Virus record (IMG/VR): IMGVR_UViG_3300005289_000016
Location: 62,001 to 126,000 of that record
DNA length: 64,000 nt
Direction: 5' to 3' (one strand)
Shown here: one piece after another, positions 25,757 through 30,050 of the stretch
Position numbering within the stretch: the stretch's first letter is position 1
Layout: the number at the start of each line of letters is the position of its first letter
The notes under the pieces: model-generated
What the model saw: the letters and a program-made list of their open reading frames with translations, nothing else
What the model was told of the DNA's origin: nothing
Database searches by the model: none
Position numbers and translations under genes: made by a program

Positions 25757-26218
25757 ATGTCATTAACGATCGTGGAACAAGACCTGTTTGACGTCCCTGC
25801 CGACACCCGTGTGATCACGATCAATCTGGTCGGGGCAATGGGAGCCGGTGTGGCTCGAACTGCCCGTAACACGGTCCCAGGGCTTCACAAGCACTATCGC
25901 AAGATGTACCCAACGATTGAGCCAGGGAACATCATCACGTATAAACACGAAGACATGCGTTACCTGCTGGTGCCTACCAAACTGGACTGGAGAGATTCTT
26001 CTCCACGGAGTCTGGTGATTCATCACATCAACAAGTTAGCCGTCTTGGCCAGCCGGCACAGACTCGGACGCATTGTCTTACCACCATTAGGTTGCGGTCA
26101 TGGCGGGTTGAGTTGGGAAGACGATATTCAGTACGTCTACCGGGCTCTCTATCCGTTCATTGAAGCAGACATCACAGTCGCTCTAGGCGACAGCAGGAGA
26201 AAGAATGGAAGGTCCTAA
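25757..26218 (+). CDS. Macrodomain protein, DarG/Poa1p-like ADP-ribosylhydrolase
   Basis: INLVGAMGAGVA, LVPTKLDWR and LPPLGCGHGGLSW match the DarG-type macro motifs. Confidence 0.8.
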   Translation: MSLTIVEQDLFDVPADTRVITINLVGAMGAGVARTARNTVPGLHKHYRKMYPTIEPGNIITYKHEDMRYLLVPTKLDWRDSSPRSLVIHHINKLAVLASRHRLGRIVLPPLGCGHGGLSWEDDIQYVYRALYPFIEADITVALGDSRRKNGRS

Positions 26219-27098
26219 CTATTTCCGCACGGCGTATGAATTCCTTCATCGTGGGAACGTCAAACGAGTGCCCGGTAGTCCTGATCAAGTGGCGTTGCTG
26301 AAGAGTGCTCTTACTGCACCCAAGTTCGCCTTGCCTGAAGGTGGTCGAATCCTCGATAACAACCTACGCTGCCTGCCGAACGTCATTCGGTTGCCGTACC
26401 CGGTTGTGGTCCTCGAGTATTTCCACAATGAGAACTACCTAAAAGGGATTGCGGAAGAAGCCACCCGTGAAGGTATCCCAGACCGTGTCTTGCAGTTGAT
26501 GACTCATGGCATGTACACCCGGGACAAGATCATCGTCATTGCTAGCCAGCCTGTATCTGGAGGCCCTATCAGCGTTGGAGTGATCAGTCACATCCCTGCA
26601 CAGAAAGATTGGGTAGTGGCTCCGTTCATTTGCAGCATGCCTGCCGATAAGGGCGATATGCTCCAGCACCTCGAGTCAGGTCGTATCCCGACCGAATTGT
26701 TCTCCGAGACTAGCCTGAGCAAGGTGTGGTTCGAAAAGCTGTCGTCGGCTACCCTGACTGGTCCGGTTAAGGCCATCTGTGAGTTGTGTGAGGCCTTTGC
26801 ATTCAGCAACATCTCTGAACAGGAAATCCCTGCCAAGAAGATGACCTTCACCGAACAGCGCAAGAAGGCACTTCCTTACGACAGCTACCGTGTGCTGGTC
26901 GTCAACAAGAAAGAGCGCATCGTGTCTGCTGGTCGGACCGAGACTGGTCCGTGTGGAGAACGTCGTCAGAGCCGTGAGCACGACCGTCGTGGCCATGACC
27001 GGACTTATAAACGCTCTGGCAAGATCATCTGGATCAACCCCATGATTGTGAACGCCGGAGTGGGCGGACGCATCATCAAAGACTACCAACTGAAGTAA
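26205..27098 (+). CDS. Hypothetical phage protein with basic C-terminal REHDRRGH motif
   Basis: RLPYPVVVLEY and RQSREHDRRGHDRTYKRSGKIIWI, a pattern I recall from uncharacterised phage proteins. Confidence 0.7.
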   Translation: MEGPNYFRTAYEFLHRGNVKRVPGSPDQVALLKSALTAPKFALPEGGRILDNNLRCLPNVIRLPYPVVVLEYFHNENYLKGIAEEATREGIPDRVLQLMTHGMYTRDKIIVIASQPVSGGPISVGVISHIPAQKDWVVAPFICSMPADKGDMLQHLESGRIPTELFSETSLSKVWFEKLSSATLTGPVKAICELCEAFAFSNISEQEIPAKKMTFTEQRKKALPYDSYRVLVVNKKERIVSAGRTETGPCGERRQSREHDRRGHDRTYKRSGKIIWINPMIVNAGVGGRIIKDYQLK

Positions 27099-27568: not shown

Positions 27569-27683
27569 GAAACACCGGTGGTGGCACATCGCCGGTACTT
27601 TTAGGGGGTCTGTAGAAGGCCTATTCTAGCCTGCTCCGAGACTAGCGTACCCGTCCGCAACATGGCTCGGCTATGAGACCCCC
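27569..27683 (+). ncRNA. Candidate structured leader or small RNA
   Basis: TATG at 27566; ACCGGTG/CGCCGGT hairpin; GGGGGTCT/AGACCCCC stem enclosing TAGAA/TTCTA and CCGAG/CTCGG stems. Confidence 0.45.
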
Positions 27684-27714
27684 GCCTATTTCAATAACCG
27701 GTAAGGAACTACCG

Positions 27715-28578
27715 ATGCAACTGAATTCTTTCTACACTGGCAGCAAAGTGGTTGGCGCTATCCCAATGTCTCACGACGATTTCTGTCGTTACGTTGGCCG
27801 TGATATCGACCCAGAAGCACTGGACCTCACTGGTTATCTGGTGGAGTACCTGGACGGCGGCAAAGCCAACCACCCGGGCCACGTTGGTTACATCAGCTGG
27901 TCTCCTTCCGAAGTGTTCGAGAAGAACTACATCAGCATCGGTGACATTACCGGCCTAGCGCCGTTCATCATCCGCTTGAAGGCTGAGCGGGCTGAGAACT
28001 ACGACCGCCTCCAGAAGCTGCGTAGCTTCCTGGACATCCAGGACGAGAAGACTCGTGACGAACCTCGTACTGACGAGCGTCAAGCGTTCCTCGACAAGAT
28101 CCCGACCCTGGACATCCAGCATCTGGCCCTGCAACAAGAGCAACTGCGCCTGATGCAAGGTCTGGAAGAAGTTCTGACCCAGCGCTTGGAATTACTGGTA
28201 CCAGAAGCCCGTGTCGAGCACAAAGCCTCGATCCGTTTCTCGGTAGCCAACGGCACTCGCTTCGACATCATGCCACGCGTCTTCAAAGCGCTGGAAGGTC
28301 AGATCGACGCCTGCTGCTACACCGGCACCATCTACAACATCCCGGTCAACTCCATCAAGGTCTTCGGCCAGAATGGCGATCAACTCGATGACGCTACTGT
28401 GCGTGTTGAGAAGATGGTTCGTGGTTTCGGCATCTCTGGCGACATCGGTGAAGAACTGTTGTTCGACATCGGCATGGACGTCCAGCGCGGCATCACTCAC
28501 GTGACCAGCTCGTTCTCGGAAGACTTCCAGATCGAGATCGAAGTACAACTGGCCGACATCAATCGTCGTCTGGTGTAA
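27715..28578 (+). CDS. Phage protein with N-terminal YLVEYLDGGKANHPGHVGYISWSP domain and coiled coil
   Basis: AAGGA RBS before ATG 27715; the N-terminal motif is common in uncharacterised phage proteins. Confidence 0.7.
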   Translation: MQLNSFYTGSKVVGAIPMSHDDFCRYVGRDIDPEALDLTGYLVEYLDGGKANHPGHVGYISWSPSEVFEKNYISIGDITGLAPFIIRLKAERAENYDRLQKLRSFLDIQDEKTRDEPRTDERQAFLDKIPTLDIQHLALQQEQLRLMQGLEEVLTQRLELLVPEARVEHKASIRFSVANGTRFDIMPRVFKALEGQIDACCYTGTIYNIPVNSIKVFGQNGDQLDDATVRVEKMVRGFGISGDIGEELLFDIGMDVQRGITHVTSSFSEDFQIEIEVQLADINRRLV

Positions 28579-28685: not shown

Positions 28686-28737
28686 AGTGCCCTTGTCCCT
28701 TGACTTTCGGTCGTAAGCGGAAAACGTCCTGGGCACT
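28686..28737 (+). ncRNA. Candidate three-way-junction RNA at the start of the non-coding island
   Basis: AGTGCCC/GGGCACT closing stem, GAC-TTTCG-GTC hairpin; TATG at 28679 just upstream. Confidence 0.45.
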
Positions 28738-28745
28738 GAAGCGTT

Positions 28746-28853
28746 TGAGAAAGGGCCTGGCCGCCTGCGGCCGTGATCCGTGCAGCCTTTGAGCAAGCAG
28801 AGGGATCGGCAGCCTTGTGCAGCCACTTGCCGCCGGCGCTGGGCCCTTTCTCA
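28746..28853 (+). ncRNA. Candidate 108-nt structured RNA with a long terminal stem
   Basis: Perfect 12-bp TGAGAAAGGGCC/GGCCCTTTCTCA, internal GGCCG/CGGCC and GATCC/GGATC stems, three GCAGCC copies. Confidence 0.55.
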
Positions 28854-28861
28854 TCCTATCC

Positions 28862-28950
28862 GGAGAGATTTCTGAGCGGTCAAAAGAATCAGACTGTAAA
28901 TCTGACGTGCGTAGCGCACTTCGTAGGTTCGAATCCTTCTCTCTCCACCA
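28862..28950 (+). tRNA. tRNA-Tyr(GUA)
   Basis: GGAGAGA/TCTCTCC acceptor, TCAGA-CTGTAAA-TCTGA anticodon arm, long variable arm, GGTTCGAATCC, encoded ACCA. Confidence 0.95.
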
Positions 28951-28957
28951 TTTCAAT

Positions 28958-29013
28958 GACGGTCGCAGCAATGCGAGGTTGACCCCGCACTGAATCAACA
29001 GTGCCTGTCGCCA
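28958..29013 (+). ncRNA. 56-nt tRNA-like mini RNA ending in GCCA
   Basis: GACGG/CTGTC terminal stem plus GCCA; TCGCA/TGCGA and GCACTG/CAGTGC hairpins; no T-loop consensus. Confidence 0.55.
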
Positions 29014-29015
29014 TA

Positions 29016-29092
29016 GGTTCTATAGCTCAGTTGGTTAGAGCACCGGCCTGTCACGCCGGGGGTCAGGGGTTCAAGTCCCCTTAGAGCCGCCA
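29016..29092 (+). tRNA. tRNA-Asp(GUC)
   Basis: GGTTCTA/TAGAGCC acceptor, CCGGC-CTGTCAC-GCCGG, GGTTCAAGTCC, GCCA. Confidence 0.95.
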
Positions 29093-29097
29093 CATTT

Positions 29098-29176
29098 AGG
29101 GGTGTAGCCAAGTCTGGCCTAAGGCAACAGGTTTTGATCCTGTCATTCTCTGGTTCGAATCCAGATGCCCCTTCCA
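29098..29176 (+). tRNA. tRNA-Gln(UUG)
   Basis: AGGGGTG/TGCCCCT acceptor, ACAGG-TTTTGAT-CCTGT, GGTTCGAATCC, TCCA. Confidence 0.93.
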
Positions 29177-29185
29177 TGTTGTATA

Positions 29186-29287
29186 GTTCACTGCCCATTG
29201 GCCGCATAGTCCCGCAAGCCCCTTCAAGGCGAAGCGAATGGGACTGGCAGCGCAGGGGTTCTGGGTACAGCCCAGCAGTGAACGCCA
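29186..29287 (+). ncRNA. 102-nt tRNA-like RNA with an 8-bp acceptor stem and GCCA end
   Basis: GTTCACTG/CAGTGAAC plus GCCA; CTGGG/CCCAG arm stacked on it; central arm AGTCCC/GGGACT ending in GCC-CCTTCAA-GGC. Confidence 0.6.
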
Positions 29288-29288
29288 T

Positions 29289-29364
29289 TCCGCGATAGCT
29301 CAGTTGGTAGAGCATACGGCTGTTAACCGTAGTGTCCCTGGTTCGAGTCCAGGTCGTGGAGCCA
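29289..29364 (+). tRNA. tRNA-Asn(GUU)
   Basis: TCCGCGA/TCGTGGA acceptor, TACGG-CTGTTAA-CCGTA, GGTTCGAGTCC, GCCA. Confidence 0.95.
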
Positions 29365-29367
29365 TAC

Positions 29368-29550
29368 GCGCTCGAAAGAGCCAAACAGTAAGGTTGGTTA
29401 AATTCCGACACGCTGACCGTGGGCAGTTGCGAAGGGAGTGCGGTTCGATCCCGCATGATAAGTCTCAGAGGCAATAACCTCTGAGTAACTCTGGTGAGAC
29501 AAATGGTCAGGCCGACCCGGCCTTTAAACGCACTGGCGTAATCCAGTCGA
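29368..29550 (+). ncRNA. Candidate multibranch ncRNA containing T-arm modules
   Basis: GCTC-GAAA-GAGC; GTTGG-TTAAATT-CCGAC; TGCGG-TTCGATC-CCGCA; CTCAGAGG/CCTCTGAG; long-range CTGACCGT/ATGGTCAG. Confidence 0.55.
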
Positions 29551-29563
29551 GGGGTGGAGATAT

Positions 29564-29674
29564 AGTCCTGTAGCTCAGTTGGTTAGAGCGCTGCCTTTTC
29601 AGGCCGGACCCTTCGGGGTCGTCGGCCTAACAGACACGGCGGAGGTCGGTAGTTCGAATCTACCTAGGACGACC
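29564..29674 (+). tRNA. Atypical tRNA (Glu-UUC-like) with a 35-nt insertion in the anticodon loop; functional status unknown
   Basis: Intact D arm TAGCTCAGTTGGTTAGAGC, anticodon stem CTGCC/GGCGG, AGGTC, T arm GGTAG-TTCGAAT-CTACC. The 42-nt loop holds a cUUCGg hairpin; 6-bp acceptor pairing; no CCA. Confidence 0.75.
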
Positions 29675-29680
29675 CTTTCA

Positions 29681-29735
29681 ATCAGCGGCATTCATGCGCG
29701 GCGCGCATGGTGTACTCGGACGAGGTCCCGCTGGT
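29681..29735 (+). ncRNA. Candidate small structured RNA
   Basis: ATCAGCGG/CCGCTGGT stem enclosing CATGCGC/GCGCATG and GGAC/GTCC hairpins. Confidence 0.4.
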
Positions 29736-29750
29736 TGGATTCAGTTAGAC

Positions 29751-29902
29751 GATGATATAGCTCAGTGGTAGAGCGGTGAGGGTAAAGACGAGACTCGGGT
29801 TCGATTCCCGGAGGACTGTGCTAGAACACAGGCCTTAGCTCAGTGGTAGAGCGCGGTCGTGCACCTTGCAGGCGTCGGTTTGATTCCGGCTATCGTCGCA
29901 CC
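29751..29902 (+). ncRNA. Twin, strand-swapped tRNA-like RNA with two D arms and two T arms
   Basis: Two identical TAGCTCAGTGGTAGAGCG D arms, two T arms, outer 7-bp GATGATA/TATCGTC acceptor, inner loop-capped AGGACTG/CAGGCCT acceptor. Confidence 0.7.
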
Positions 29903-29904
29903 TA

Positions 29905-30050
29905 CACGTCTCATGGGTGTGCACGCCCAGTGAGCTGACTCTACTCGAGGTCCGTCTGAGTAGATGTCAGAGTGTTACCTGATGGACTGCTGTACGATCT
30001 GGCTCATGCCAGCCGCAGCATGTGACTCGACCGAACAGTGGTCGACAAAG
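29905..30050 (+). ncRNA. Candidate multi-hairpin RNA at the end of the island
   Basis: CTCA-TGGGTG/CGCCCA-G-TGAG; CTGAC-TCTACTC/GAGTAGA-T-GTCAG; CTGGC/GCCAG; TCGACC/GGTCGA. Confidence 0.45.

What the first reader, a model, noticed from the sequence alone, without database searches (positions are those of the whole stretch)
29564..29674. tRNA-Glu-like gene with a 35-nt cUUCGg hairpin inserted in the anticodon loop
Seen: perfect D arm, anticodon stem CTGCC/GGCGG, AGGTC and T arm, but a 42-nt anticodon loop: TTTTC-AGGCCG-GACCC-TTCG-GGGTC-GT-CGGCCT-AACAGACAC. Removing 35 nt after TT-TTC-A restores TT-TTC-AC (Glu, insertion at the 37/38 intron position). Removing 35 nt after TT instead gives TT-GAC-AC (Val). 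The GTCC...GGAC-G acceptor resembles bacterial tRNA-Glu but pairs only 6 bp and lacks CCA. Established: bacterial tRNA introns are group I/II ribozymes, far longer than 35 nt, while short 37/38 introns are archaeal or eukaryotic. Inference: either a protein-spliced mini-intron or an anticodon-masked decoy.
Basis: partly seen in the sequence, partly recalled or inferred. Interest (0 to 1): 0.78.

Follow-up and report, generated by a model that had tools for sequence, protein, structure and literature searches.

The report
Hairpin-interrupted valine tRNA gene in phage
A giant bacterial virus keeps, under clear natural selection, a valine-type (not glutamate-type) transfer RNA gene whose anticodon loop holds a swappable hairpin; no known splicing system fits it, so it is either a new kind of tRNA intron or a tRNA look-alike that does not decode.

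Summary
Window 29564-29675 is a full cloverleaf (Rfam tRNA, 50 bits) with a 42-nt anticodon loop holding a cUUCGg-capped hairpin, an A·G mismatch at 1:72, and ACCC instead of ACCA. It lies in the only tRNA cluster of a 276-kb jumbo phage, probably of Pseudomonas.

I recovered 12 distinct versions from related phage genomes and contigs. The cloverleaf is under strong selection: 14 of 22 pairs change on both sides, including the tertiary 19:56 pair. It is not a pseudogene.

The Glu reading fails. The 5' "anticodon" varies: UUC, UCA, AUC, UUA. The last four loop bases (A-C-R-Y) and A73-C74-C75 never change. The body is 79% identical to E. coli tRNA-Val(GAC). The insert therefore lies 5' of A35; in the window that is 33/34 (UU|35 nt|GACAC).

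The hairpin is a module with about four sequence types shuffled among bodies. It sits at a different offset in one gene and is absent from one orthologue, whose loop still has 11 nt. There is no bulge-helix-bulge motif, no group I intron, and no RtcB, Rnl, EndA, RNase III, PNK or CCA-enzyme domain in the phage.

Best guess is an unspliced tRNA-Val mimic (0.4). The main rival is a novel spliced tRNA-Val precursor (0.33). No RNA data could decide between them.

The parts
29564..29675 (+). Whole interrupted tRNA-Val-type gene ('tRNA-X'), positions 1 to 76
   Evidence: Rfam RF00005 scores 50 bits over model positions 1-71. ARAGORN -i finds it. Twelve homologues show 96.6% of cells paired and 14 of 22 pairs changed on both sides.
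29564..29597 (+). 5' body: acceptor 5' strand, D arm, anticodon-stem 5' strand CTGCC, then U32 U33
   Evidence: Read. This stretch has its best E. coli match in annotated tRNA-Val, at 88-91% identity, across about 5,490 records.
29598..29632 (+). 35-nt insert under the Val(GAC) reading: TTC + hairpin + AACA, lying between U33 and G34
   Evidence: Junction test across homologues. Alignment to E. coli tRNA-Val, whose loop is TTGACAT. The exact boundary is ambiguous by 1 nt (33/34 or 34/35).
29601..29628 (+). Hairpin module: 6-bp lower stem AGGCCG/CGGCCT, GU bulge, 5-bp upper stem GACCC/GGGTC, UUCG loop
   Evidence: Folds at -18.7 kcal/mol, z = -3.0. Unique in the genome. Nearly the same hairpin occurs in L080, L082 and in a different tRNA body, L086a.
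29633..29637 (+). G34 A35 C36 A37 C38: the 3' end of the loop. A-C-R-Y is invariant in all 12 homologues
29638..29672 (+). 3' body: anticodon-stem 3' strand GGCGG, variable loop AGGTC, T arm, acceptor 3' strand, discriminator A73
   Evidence: T-loop position 56 covaries with D-loop position 19 (G:C to A:U).
29673..29675 (+). C74 C75 followed by C where A76 would be. A73-C-C is invariant and A76 is never encoded
   Evidence: The four canonical neighbours all encode CCA.
29676..29745 (+). Conserved three-helix structured RNA that always follows tRNA-X directly; possibly part of the same unit
   Evidence: Alignments A2 and A6 show compensatory changes in all three helices. No Rfam family matches.
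28862..29364 (+). Context: canonical tRNA-Tyr, Asp, Gln and Asn of the same cluster, each with an encoded CCA

Best explanation
SHOWN. The locus is a selectively maintained RNA gene derived from a gamma-proteobacterial-type tRNA-Val. It keeps the whole L-shape: all four stems and the 19:56 elbow pair. It also keeps A35-C36-R37-Y38, G45 and A73-C74-C75. The 5'/middle part of its anticodon loop has been remodelled. The loop core is never 7 nt; it has 11-14 nt even when the hairpin is left out. It usually carries a 26-36-nt hairpin cassette. That cassette exists in a few sequence types, is shuffled among bodies, and can sit at different offsets or be missing.

INFERRED (my commitment, about 0.4). 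The RNA is not converted into an ordinary decoder. It is cut out of the polycistronic cluster transcript like a tRNA, by host RNase P at the 5' end and host 3' trimming down to ACC. It then acts unspliced, as a tRNA-Val mimic whose anticodon arm is capped. It can occupy proteins that recognise the tRNA L-shape and the 3'-stacked half of the anticodon loop. Candidates are a host tRNA-targeting defence nuclease, ValRS, or processing and modification enzymes. It cannot be cleaved at the usual 33/34-34/35 anticodon-nuclease sites and cannot decode. The hairpin types would then be exchangeable caps, shuffled by the frequent recombination in this cluster, which carries homing-endonuclease-like genes. 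The target protein is unknown.
For: Selection on the fold: 96.6% of cells are paired, against 33-51% when the partner columns are slid. Fourteen of 22 pairs change on both sides, and 0 of 500 shuffles reach the observed values. Pair 19:56 switches from G:C to A:U.

Valine ancestry: the 5' half has its best E. coli match in tRNA-Val, and 60 of 76 aligned positions match tRNA-Val(GAC) once the insert is removed.

Against a precise intron, and so for an unspliced role:
- The 5' flank is 3, 4, 5 or 9 nt and the 3' flank is 5, 8 or 9 nt.
- In L086a the hairpin lies on the other side of the GCA motif.
- Orthologue L086b has no hairpin yet has an 11-nt loop with perfect, compensated stems.
- 1:72 is mismatched in 8 of 12 versions.
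- A76 is never encoded, although all canonical neighbours encode CCA.
- The 276-kb genome has no domain of RtcB, Rnl1, Rnl2, EndA, ATP-dependent ligase, 2'-5' ligase, RNase III, CCA-adding enzyme, RlaP or PNK3P.

The same clusters keep other conserved non-canonical tRNA-like modules.

Literature: phage tRNAs are proposed to evade anticodon nucleases through anticodon-loop changes (PMC10264068).
Against: - No RNA or protein-binding data exist for this RNA.
- The first two or three and the last four loop bases rebuild a canonical Y32-U33-N34-A35-C36-R37-Y38 loop in 11 of 12 versions (L086a has C33). That is what a spliced decoder would need and is not obviously required of a mimic.
- The invariant A35, C36, A73 and G45 are the ValRS identity set (established knowledge). 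This hints at charging, which most simply serves translation.
- No phage tRNA decoy of this kind has been demonstrated.
- The absence of Pfam hits does not exclude a novel enzyme among the roughly 300 mostly unannotated ORFs, or a host enzyme.
Confidence: 0.4

Rival explanations
1. It is a true interrupted tRNA-Val gene. The pre-tRNA is cut on both sides of the insert (5' of A35) and rejoined by a protein route that is neither archaeal bulge-helix-bulge/EndA nor group I self-splicing. This yields a decoding tRNA-Val with anticodon GAC in the window and UAC, AAC or CAC in relatives. A76 is then added by the host CCA enzyme.
For: - Keeping the first 3 and the last 4 loop bases gives Y-U-N-A-C-R-Y, always a valine anticodon, in all 12 versions. 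Indels fall only between these blocks.
- The window's UU...GACAC matches the E. coli tRNA-Val loop UUGACAU.
- A35, C36, A73, G45 and C74-C75 are invariant.
- All tertiary positions needed by a working tRNA are kept, including the covarying 19:56 pair.
- It sits among working tRNAs in the cluster.
- GUA makes up 15-17% of valine codons, unusually high for an A-ending codon in this phage.
- 'Enigmatic' introns have been reported in Lak megaphage tRNAs (PMC6784885).
Against: - No known bacterial or phage machinery does this.
- No bulge-helix-bulge motif is present, and no ligase, endonuclease or repair domains are in the genome.
- Flank lengths and hairpin offset are inconsistent between versions. 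The hairpin-less L086b would need removal of just 4 nt.
- 1:72 is mismatched in most versions.
- With a fixed 3' junction most versions would carry A34, which is unusual in bacteria.
- The only contig spanning the site in an 'RNA?' run was unspliced, and these runs probably contain DNA.
Confidence: 0.33
2. One reading: a tRNA-Glu(UUC) with a 35-nt intron at the canonical 37/38 position.
For: ARAGORN -i calls Glu(ttc) for the window, L080, L081 and L102. The anticodon stem CTGCC/GGCGG and the bases TTTTCA resemble the bacterial tRNA-Glu anticodon arm.
Against: - The same rule gives UCA (L006/7, L082/3), AUC (L084, L087) and UUA (L085) in orthologues.
- C11:G24, C13:G22, a 5-nt variable loop containing position 47, A73 and an unpaired 1:72 contradict the GluRS identity set (sequence; identity set from established knowledge).
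- The best E. coli match is tRNA-Val, not tRNA-Glu.
Confidence: 0.03
3. It serves only as processing punctuation. The tRNA-like fold recruits RNase P and 3' processing enzymes to release the conserved structured RNA that immediately follows (29676-29745), or it is one RNA together with that element. The anticodon arm would be functionally irrelevant.
For: The downstream RNA follows tRNA-X within about 5 nt in every genome. In L009 an ordinary tRNA-Ser(GCT) occupies the slot in front of a diverged copy of that RNA. A73-C74-C75 are RNase P contacts.
Against: This does not explain the covariation-maintained anticodon stem, the invariant A-C-R-Y, or the maintained hairpin. Any canonical tRNA would do the job.
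Confidence: 0.14
4. It is a decaying tRNA pseudogene that happened to receive a palindromic insertion.
For: It lacks CCA, has a 1:72 mismatch and a non-canonical loop. The cluster is mosaic, and tRNA content differs between relatives.
Against: There are twelve versions with 14 doubly compensated pairs. Outside the 1:72 position, only 1 cell in the remaining 21 pairs is unpaired. The hairpin keeps its fold through unrelated sequences. Loop ends and A73-CC are invariant.
Confidence: 0.05

Closest known systems
Archaeal/eukaryal protein-spliced tRNA introns (bulge-helix-bulge motif, EndA/TSEN endonuclease, RtcB or Trl1 ligase)
   Same: A short (tens of nt), structured insert in the anticodon loop of an otherwise complete tRNA gene. 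The insert sequence is free to vary while the exons are conserved.
   Different: There is no 3-nt bulge / 4-bp helix / 3-nt bulge geometry. The flanks are unpaired, 3-5 nt on the 5' side and 8-9 nt on the 3' side, around a 6-7-bp stem. The insert lies 5' of A35, not at 37/38. No EndA or RtcB domain is in the phage. The host is bacterial.
Bacterial and phage group I introns in tRNA anticodon loops (e.g. cyanobacterial tRNA-Leu(UAA), Azoarcus tRNA-Ile)
   Same: They are the only established tRNA introns in the bacterial world, and they lie in the anticodon loop.
   Different: Those are ribozymes of at least about 200 nt with helices P1-P9. Here the insert is 32-42 nt with a single hairpin, and there is no Intron_gpI match.
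'Enigmatic' tRNA introns of Lak megaphages (Devoto et al. 2019, PMC6784885)
   Same: Phage-encoded tRNAs that are too long, with predicted anticodon-loop inserts of unknown removal mechanism, conserved between genomes.
   Different: They come from a different phage lineage and host (Prevotella). The Lak inserts were reported as near-identical between cohorts, and one may encode a tRNA. No covariation, isotype or modularity analysis was given there. No sequence relation was tested here.
Phage tRNAs with altered anticodon loops that escape host anticodon nucleases (van den Berg et al. 2023, PMC10264068)
   Same: A phage tRNA cluster with changes concentrated in the anticodon loop, at or next to the classic cleavage sites (33/34, 34/35).
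   Different: Those are point changes in 7-nt loops of working decoders. Here the loop is expanded to 11-48 nt, so decoding without processing is implausible.
Valine-accepting viral tRNA-like structures (TYMV-type TLS) and stable non-tRNA RNAs in the T4 tRNA cluster (from my own knowledge, not tested here)
   Same: Virus-encoded L-shaped RNAs that keep aaRS and processing determinants without decoding. Structured non-tRNA RNAs co-transcribed with phage tRNAs.
   Different: The TLS is a pseudoknotted 3' UTR element of plant RNA viruses. The functions of T4 species 1 and 2 RNAs are unknown. There is no sequence or structural homology to either.

Membership tests
tRNA (Rfam RF00005) | Cloverleaf with acceptor, D, anticodon and T arms, plus conserved tertiary positions | tested here: met
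   50.0 bits against a gathering score of 29, over model positions 1-71. Covariation in three of the four stems (the D stem is invariant) and at 19:56.
tRNA (Rfam RF00005) | 7-nt anticodon loop presenting a contiguous anticodon | tested here: not met
   The loop is 42 nt in the window and 39-48 nt in relatives. It is 11 nt in the hairpin-less L086b.
tRNA (Rfam RF00005) | Usable 3' end (N73-CCA, encoded or addable) | tested here: inconclusive
   A73-C74-C75 are invariant, but A76 is never encoded, and the phage has no CCA-adding enzyme domain. The host enzyme could add A76; this was not testable.
tRNA-Glu | Anticodon UUC conserved among orthologues | tested here: not met
   The 37/38 reading gives UUC, UCA, AUC or UUA in different orthologues.
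tRNA-Glu | GluRS body identity elements (G1:C72, U2:A71, U11:A24, U13:G22..A46, no position 47) | tested here: not met
   The sequence shows A1·G72, G2:C71, C11:G24, C13:G22 and a 5-nt variable loop. The list of elements comes from established knowledge.
tRNA-Val | A35 and C36 (major ValRS determinants) plus A73 and G45 | tested here: met
   The last four loop bases are A-C-R-Y, and A73 and G45 are invariant, in all 12 versions. The list of determinants comes from established knowledge.
tRNA-Val | Sequence relationship to canonical bacterial tRNA-Val | tested here: met
   The 5' half has its best match in annotated tRNA-Val in about 5,490 E. coli records at 88-91% identity. 60 of 76 aligned positions are identical to tRNA-Val(GAC) after removal of the insert.
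tRNA-Val | Is actually charged with valine and decodes GUN codons | not testable with these tools
   This needs charging assays and tRNA-seq.
BHB-type (archaeal/eukaryal) tRNA intron | Two 3-nt bulges separated by a 4-bp helix at the splice sites | tested here: not met
   Folds of all anticodon arms show an asymmetric internal loop (3-5 nt on the 5' side, 8-9 nt on the 3' side) next to a 6-7-bp stem. There is no exon-intron helix.
BHB-type (archaeal/eukaryal) tRNA intron | Splicing endonuclease and ligase available | tested here: not met
   PF01974, PF01139, PF09414, PF09511, PF01068 and PF13563 are all absent from the phage genome. The host genome is unknown.
Group I intron in tRNA | Ribozyme core of at least about 200 nt; Rfam Intron_gpI match | tested here: not met
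   The insert is 35 nt with one hairpin. No such match appears even at E up to 10.
Repeated palindromic or mobile hairpin element | Multiple copies in the genome or in other phages | tested here: not met
   There is a single copy in the genome and no match to the degenerate hairpin pattern in IMG/VR. However, the same hairpin type occurs in two different tRNA bodies of related phages.

The most novel reading that the evidence does not exclude
This would be a third kind of tRNA intron: a short hairpin intron lying inside or just 5' of the anticodon of a phage tRNA-Val, removed in a bacterial cell by a protein cut-and-join pathway. That pathway would be unrelated to EndA/bulge-helix-bulge splicing and to group I self-splicing, and its enzymes would be still unidentified, in the phage or the host. 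The hairpin cassettes would behave as exchangeable, possibly mobile, modules.
Probability: 0.3. Interest if true: 0.9.

Novelty: new variant of a known kind. Interest (0 to 1): 0.62.

Why it matters
In bacteria and their viruses, the only tRNA introns with a known mechanism are self-splicing ribozymes.

If this conserved, covariation-supported, hairpin-interrupted tRNA-Val is spliced, it points to an unknown RNA cut-and-join activity in a bacterial system. If it is not spliced, it is a selected non-decoding tRNA mimic in a phage tRNA cluster. That would add an RNA player to the current picture of conflicts over tRNA between phages and bacterial defence nucleases.

Either way, standard tRNA finders would miss or mislabel such genes. 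Here they called Glu, SeC, Stop, Ala or nothing. The twelve aligned versions give a concrete, testable model and define which bases matter.

Tried and rejected
1. RNA evidence. Two run searches and one read-laying on wastewater 'RNA-Seq' contigs gave only tRNAs of other organisms and one unspliced 242-nt contig (29519-29737). These runs probably contain DNA. Uninformative.

2. Collection scans.
- The intron-bearing pattern found only the same clade.
- An insert-free allele pattern (Val or Glu loop) found none in IMG/VR.
- The hairpin pattern found none.
- The downstream-RNA pattern found only chance hits in coding DNA.

3. GenBank phages. No homologue of tRNA-X. The cultured relative pPa_SNUABM_DT01 lacks it. 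Noxifer and D6 have other odd tRNA-like genes that do not match.

4. Splicing and repair enzymes. Thirteen Pfam family searches of the genome were all negative.

5. Genes present with tRNA-X and absent from the one genome without it (G001). There were 43 candidates; of the 19 largest scanned, one was an R2K ATP-grasp and none had an RNA-processing domain. No lead.

6. Codon usage with and without tRNA-X. The differences follow GC content only.

7. Cas6f/type I-F repeat mimicry by the CTGCC/GGCAG anticodon stem. Rejected: the stem sequence is not conserved (CCGCC, CCGTC, TCGTC, CAGTC), and the window's own copy has a G·U pair.

8. The idea that the hairpin plus NCCA mimics an acceptor minihelix. 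Only 2 of 11 hairpin-bearing versions read NCCA and most read AACA, so this stays speculation.

Full report
WHAT IS THERE

The window is bases 62001-126000 of a 276,032-bp viral record that CheckV rates as complete. All of its tRNA-model hits lie in one cluster: tRNA-Tyr(GTA), Asp(GTC), Gln(TTG) and Asn(GTT) at 28862-29364, then the object of the finding at 29564-29675.

The finding's description is exact. Rfam's tRNA model matches end to end at 50.0 bits, with a 37-nt insertion in the anticodon loop. Default ARAGORN misses the gene. With introns allowed it calls Glu(ttc) with a 35-nt intron. The four canonical neighbours encode CCA; this gene ends A73-CCC. The hairpin (29601-29628) folds at -18.7 kcal/mol, z = -3.0, and is not repeated elsewhere in the genome.

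The closest cultured relative by a baseplate-hub-like protein (72% amino-acid identity) is Pseudomonas aeruginosa phage pPa_SNUABM_DT01. The host is therefore probably a Pseudomonas. This is an inference.

RELATIVES

I recovered the same cluster from several sources:
- A neighbouring protein found four IMG/VR genomes.
- A DNA pattern found two compost metagenome contigs.
- Homologues of the fast-evolving upstream ORF, traced to their contigs, gave ten more loci.

Eleven loci carry an orthologue of the interrupted gene directly or closely after tRNA-Asn. One genome (L009) has an ordinary tRNA-Ser(GCT) there instead. Together with a second, different interrupted gene in L086, this gives 12 distinct sequences.

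IT IS UNDER SELECTION AS A tRNA-SHAPED RNA

On the 12-row alignment, 96.6% of cells in the cloverleaf pairs are standard pairs, against 33-51% when the 3' partners are slid by one to three columns. Fourteen of 22 pairs show changes on both sides, and no shuffle out of 500 reaches the observed values.

The acceptor stem exists as GTCCTG/CAGGAC, GCCATG/CGTGGC, GCCCCG/TAGGGC and ATCGCT/AGCGAT. The anticodon stem exists as CTGCC, CCGCC, CCGTC, TCGTC and CAGTC, each with its complement. T-stem pair 51:63 is T:A, G:C or C:G. The tertiary elbow pair 19:56 switches from G:C to A:U in three lineages. A pseudogene does not behave like this.

IT IS VALINE-TYPE, NOT GLUTAMATE-TYPE

I tried every way of cutting the loop down to 7 nt. 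ARAGORN correspondingly calls Glu, SeC, Stop, Asp, Val and Ala for orthologues.

The last four loop bases are A-C-R-Y in all 12 sequences. The first two are U-U in 10 of 12. Keeping up to three 5' bases always gives N-A-C, a valine anticodon: GAC in the window. A73, G45 and C74-C75 are also invariant.

The 5' half has its best E. coli match in annotated tRNA-Val throughout about 5,490 records. With the insert removed, the window's gene is identical at 60 of 76 aligned positions to E. coli tRNA-Val(GAC), whose loop TTGACAT matches the window's TT...GACAC.

The body lacks the GluRS identity elements; that list comes from established knowledge. In the window the insert is therefore 29598-29632 (TTC + hairpin + AACA), between U33 and G34, with a 1-nt ambiguity (34/35 gives UAC).

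ANATOMY AND BEHAVIOUR OF THE INSERT

Each insert folds into a 6-7-bp G+C-rich lower stem, an internal loop or bulge, a 5-6-bp upper stem and a 4-6-nt loop, at -16 to -22 kcal/mol. The hairpins fall into about four sequence types:
- The window's GGCCG-GACCC-UUCG type.
- A CCCC-UCCCUCC...GGGGGA type.
- Two further types.

These types do not follow the phylogeny of the tRNA body. The window's type also occurs in L082, which has a different acceptor and anticodon stem. It occurs again, about 90% identical, in L086a, an altogether different tRNA body from the most distant genome.

The unpaired flanks vary. The 5' flank is TTTTC, TTTC, TTATC, TTTT or, in L086a, CCCGCAGCT. The 3' flank is AACA(N)ACRY, GCCAACGT, ACCAACGT or, in L086a, TACAT. 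The orthologue L086b has no hairpin at all, yet its loop is CTTGCAAACGC (11 nt), and its stems are perfect and compensated.

So the hairpin is an optional, exchangeable module. Even without it the loop is not canonical.

The clusters are mosaic. Other structured modules come and go, and relatives carry homing-endonuclease-like ORFs inside the cluster. This gives a plausible, inferred route for the shuffling.

WHAT IT IS NOT

- It is not a group I or II intron: it is too small, has one hairpin, and gives no Rfam match even at E up to 10.
- It is not an archaeal-type intron: there is no bulge-helix-bulge motif. The flanks do not pair with each other or with the exons.
- The phage genome holds no domain of RtcB, Rnl1, Rnl2, EndA, ATP-dependent DNA/RNA ligase, 2'-5' ligase, RNase III, CCA-adding enzyme, RlaP or PNK3P. 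Controls rang for all of these families except Rnl1.
- Comparing gene content with the one relative that lacks the gene gave 43 candidates. Of the 19 largest scanned, none had an RNA-processing domain.

RNA EVIDENCE

Public runs holding near-identical sequence were mostly DNA. Laying four of them gave one contig that runs through the insert unspliced and no credible joint across it. This decides nothing.

HOW IT MOST LIKELY WORKS

Two readings survive.

(a) A non-decoding tRNA-Val mimic. It is released from the cluster transcript like a tRNA and acts unspliced. The features under selection are the L-shape, the 3'-stacked half of the anticodon loop and A73-CC. The part of the loop where anticodon nucleases cut and where the U-turn forms is replaced by a variable cap. 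For this reading:
- The variable flank lengths and hairpin offset.
- The 11-nt hairpin-less orthologue.
- The frequent 1:72 mismatch.
- The missing A76.
- The absence of any splicing toolkit.
- The company of other conserved non-canonical tRNA-like RNAs in the same clusters.

The proposed target, a host tRNA-directed nuclease or another tRNA-binding protein, is pure inference, guided by PMC10264068.

(b) A genuinely spliced tRNA-Val precursor that uses an unknown route. For this reading:
- The first three and last four loop bases rebuild a canonical loop in 11 of 12 versions (L086a has C33).
- The ValRS identity set is invariant.
- GUA is relatively frequent in the phage.
- 'Enigmatic' tRNA introns have been reported in Lak megaphages (PMC6784885).

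I put (a) at 0.40 and (b) at 0.33. Pure processing punctuation for the downstream RNA gets 0.14, a pseudogene 0.05, and the Glu 37/38 reading 0.03.

NOVELTY

Over-long phage tRNAs have been noted before, in Lak phages. I found no report of a hairpin insert 5' of A35 in a phage tRNA-Val, of its modular behaviour, or of covariation evidence for such a gene. I rate it a new variant of a known kind. It would be categorically new if splicing were shown.

Noticed in passing
window 29676-29745: A conserved structured RNA of about 65 nt directly follows tRNA-X in every relative. Three helices show compensatory changes: CAGCGG/CCGCTG versus CAACGG/CCGTTG; CATGCGC/GCGCATG versus CCTGCGC/GCGCAGG; CTC-GGAC-GAG versus GGC-GGAC-GCC versus CCC-GGAT-GGG. 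No Rfam family matches.
   Followed up: partly
window 29747-29905: A 'double tRNA-like' element: two D-arm + T-arm units closed by one acceptor-like stem (GACGAT...ATCGTC). ARAGORN reads the L085 copy as a tRNA with a 72-nt intron. It is 88% identical in L085:5520-5681 and 85% in L009:16498-16652. In L085 it coexists with an intact tRNA-His, so it is not a decayed His gene.
   Followed up: partly
window 29365-29563: A 200-nt module lies between tRNA-Asn and tRNA-X. It is absent from L006 and L008 but present in L086:5133-5321 (87%) and L009:16339-16482. It holds a T-arm-like piece (about 29440-29458) and a mini-hairpin, AGGCCG-ACC-CGGCCT (29509-29523), that repeats the lower stem of the tRNA-X hairpin.
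   Followed up: partly
window 29177-29288: The spacer between tRNA-Gln and tRNA-Asn has a long-range stem, GTTCACTGC/GCAGTGAAC, that covaries in relatives: GCTCACTGC/GCAGTGAGC in L020 and GTTCACTAC/GTAGTGAAC in L019. From memory, its first 10 nt equal the 5' end of the Pseudomonas type I-F CRISPR repeat. In L020 and L102 it reads CACTGCC-CATT-GGCAGC. Possible repeat mimicry was not tested.
   Followed up: no
window 28700-28861: A large structured leader (GAGAAAGGGCC...GGGCCCTTTCTC) lies just upstream of tRNA-Tyr. It is preceded by a terminator-like hairpin and a conserved AT-rich hairpin (CGTGTAAAAAAATACACG). It is conserved at 80-100% in most relatives.
   Followed up: partly
window 28862-29364 and relatives: The canonical tRNA set is Tyr, Asp and Asn (plus His in L006, L020, L081, L085, L086 and L102), which is the queuosine-modified family, together with Gln(UUG). 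From my own knowledge, this is the target set of colicin-E5-type anticodon nucleases. All encode CCA.
   Followed up: no
L083:5031-5564; L082:7028-7612; L084:5108-5557: ORFs resembling homing endonucleases or nucleases (NUMOD4, faint; GIY-YIG; SNase) are inserted within or beside the tRNA cluster in some relatives. This is consistent with the mosaic shuffling of cluster modules.
   Followed up: no
window 25757-26218, 26205-27098 and 27673-28578: Upstream neighbours: a weak Macro-domain protein; a 297-aa ORF that hits AcrVA2-like weakly in L083; and a very fast-evolving 301-aa ORF with a crAss001_48/'Sequestin' domain (44-88% identity among relatives). This may be an anti-defence neighbourhood.
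   Followed up: partly
L013:3006-3086 (Pseudomonas phage D6) and L014:2983-3077 (phage Noxifer): Other Pseudomonas jumbo phages carry odd tRNA-like genes with expanded anticodon loops. D6's annotated 'tRNA-OTHER' has a 14-nt loop ending TACGT, the same N-A-C-R-Y ending. Noxifer has an unannotated tRNA-like sequence with a loop of about 23 nt after tRNA-Asn. Neither reaches the Rfam thresholds.
   Followed up: partly
L087:3113-3244: A second over-long tRNA-like gene (ARAGORN: Ala(ggc) with a 52-nt 'intron') lies downstream of tRNA-X in this relative.
   Followed up: no
G000:C1:238629-239369 (outside the window): An R2K-clade ATP-grasp protein (PF18299, 1e-28) is present in the three complete genomes that carry tRNA-X. 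tblastn finds it absent from the one complete genome that lacks tRNA-X. With 42 other such genes, this is probably coincidence.
   Followed up: partly
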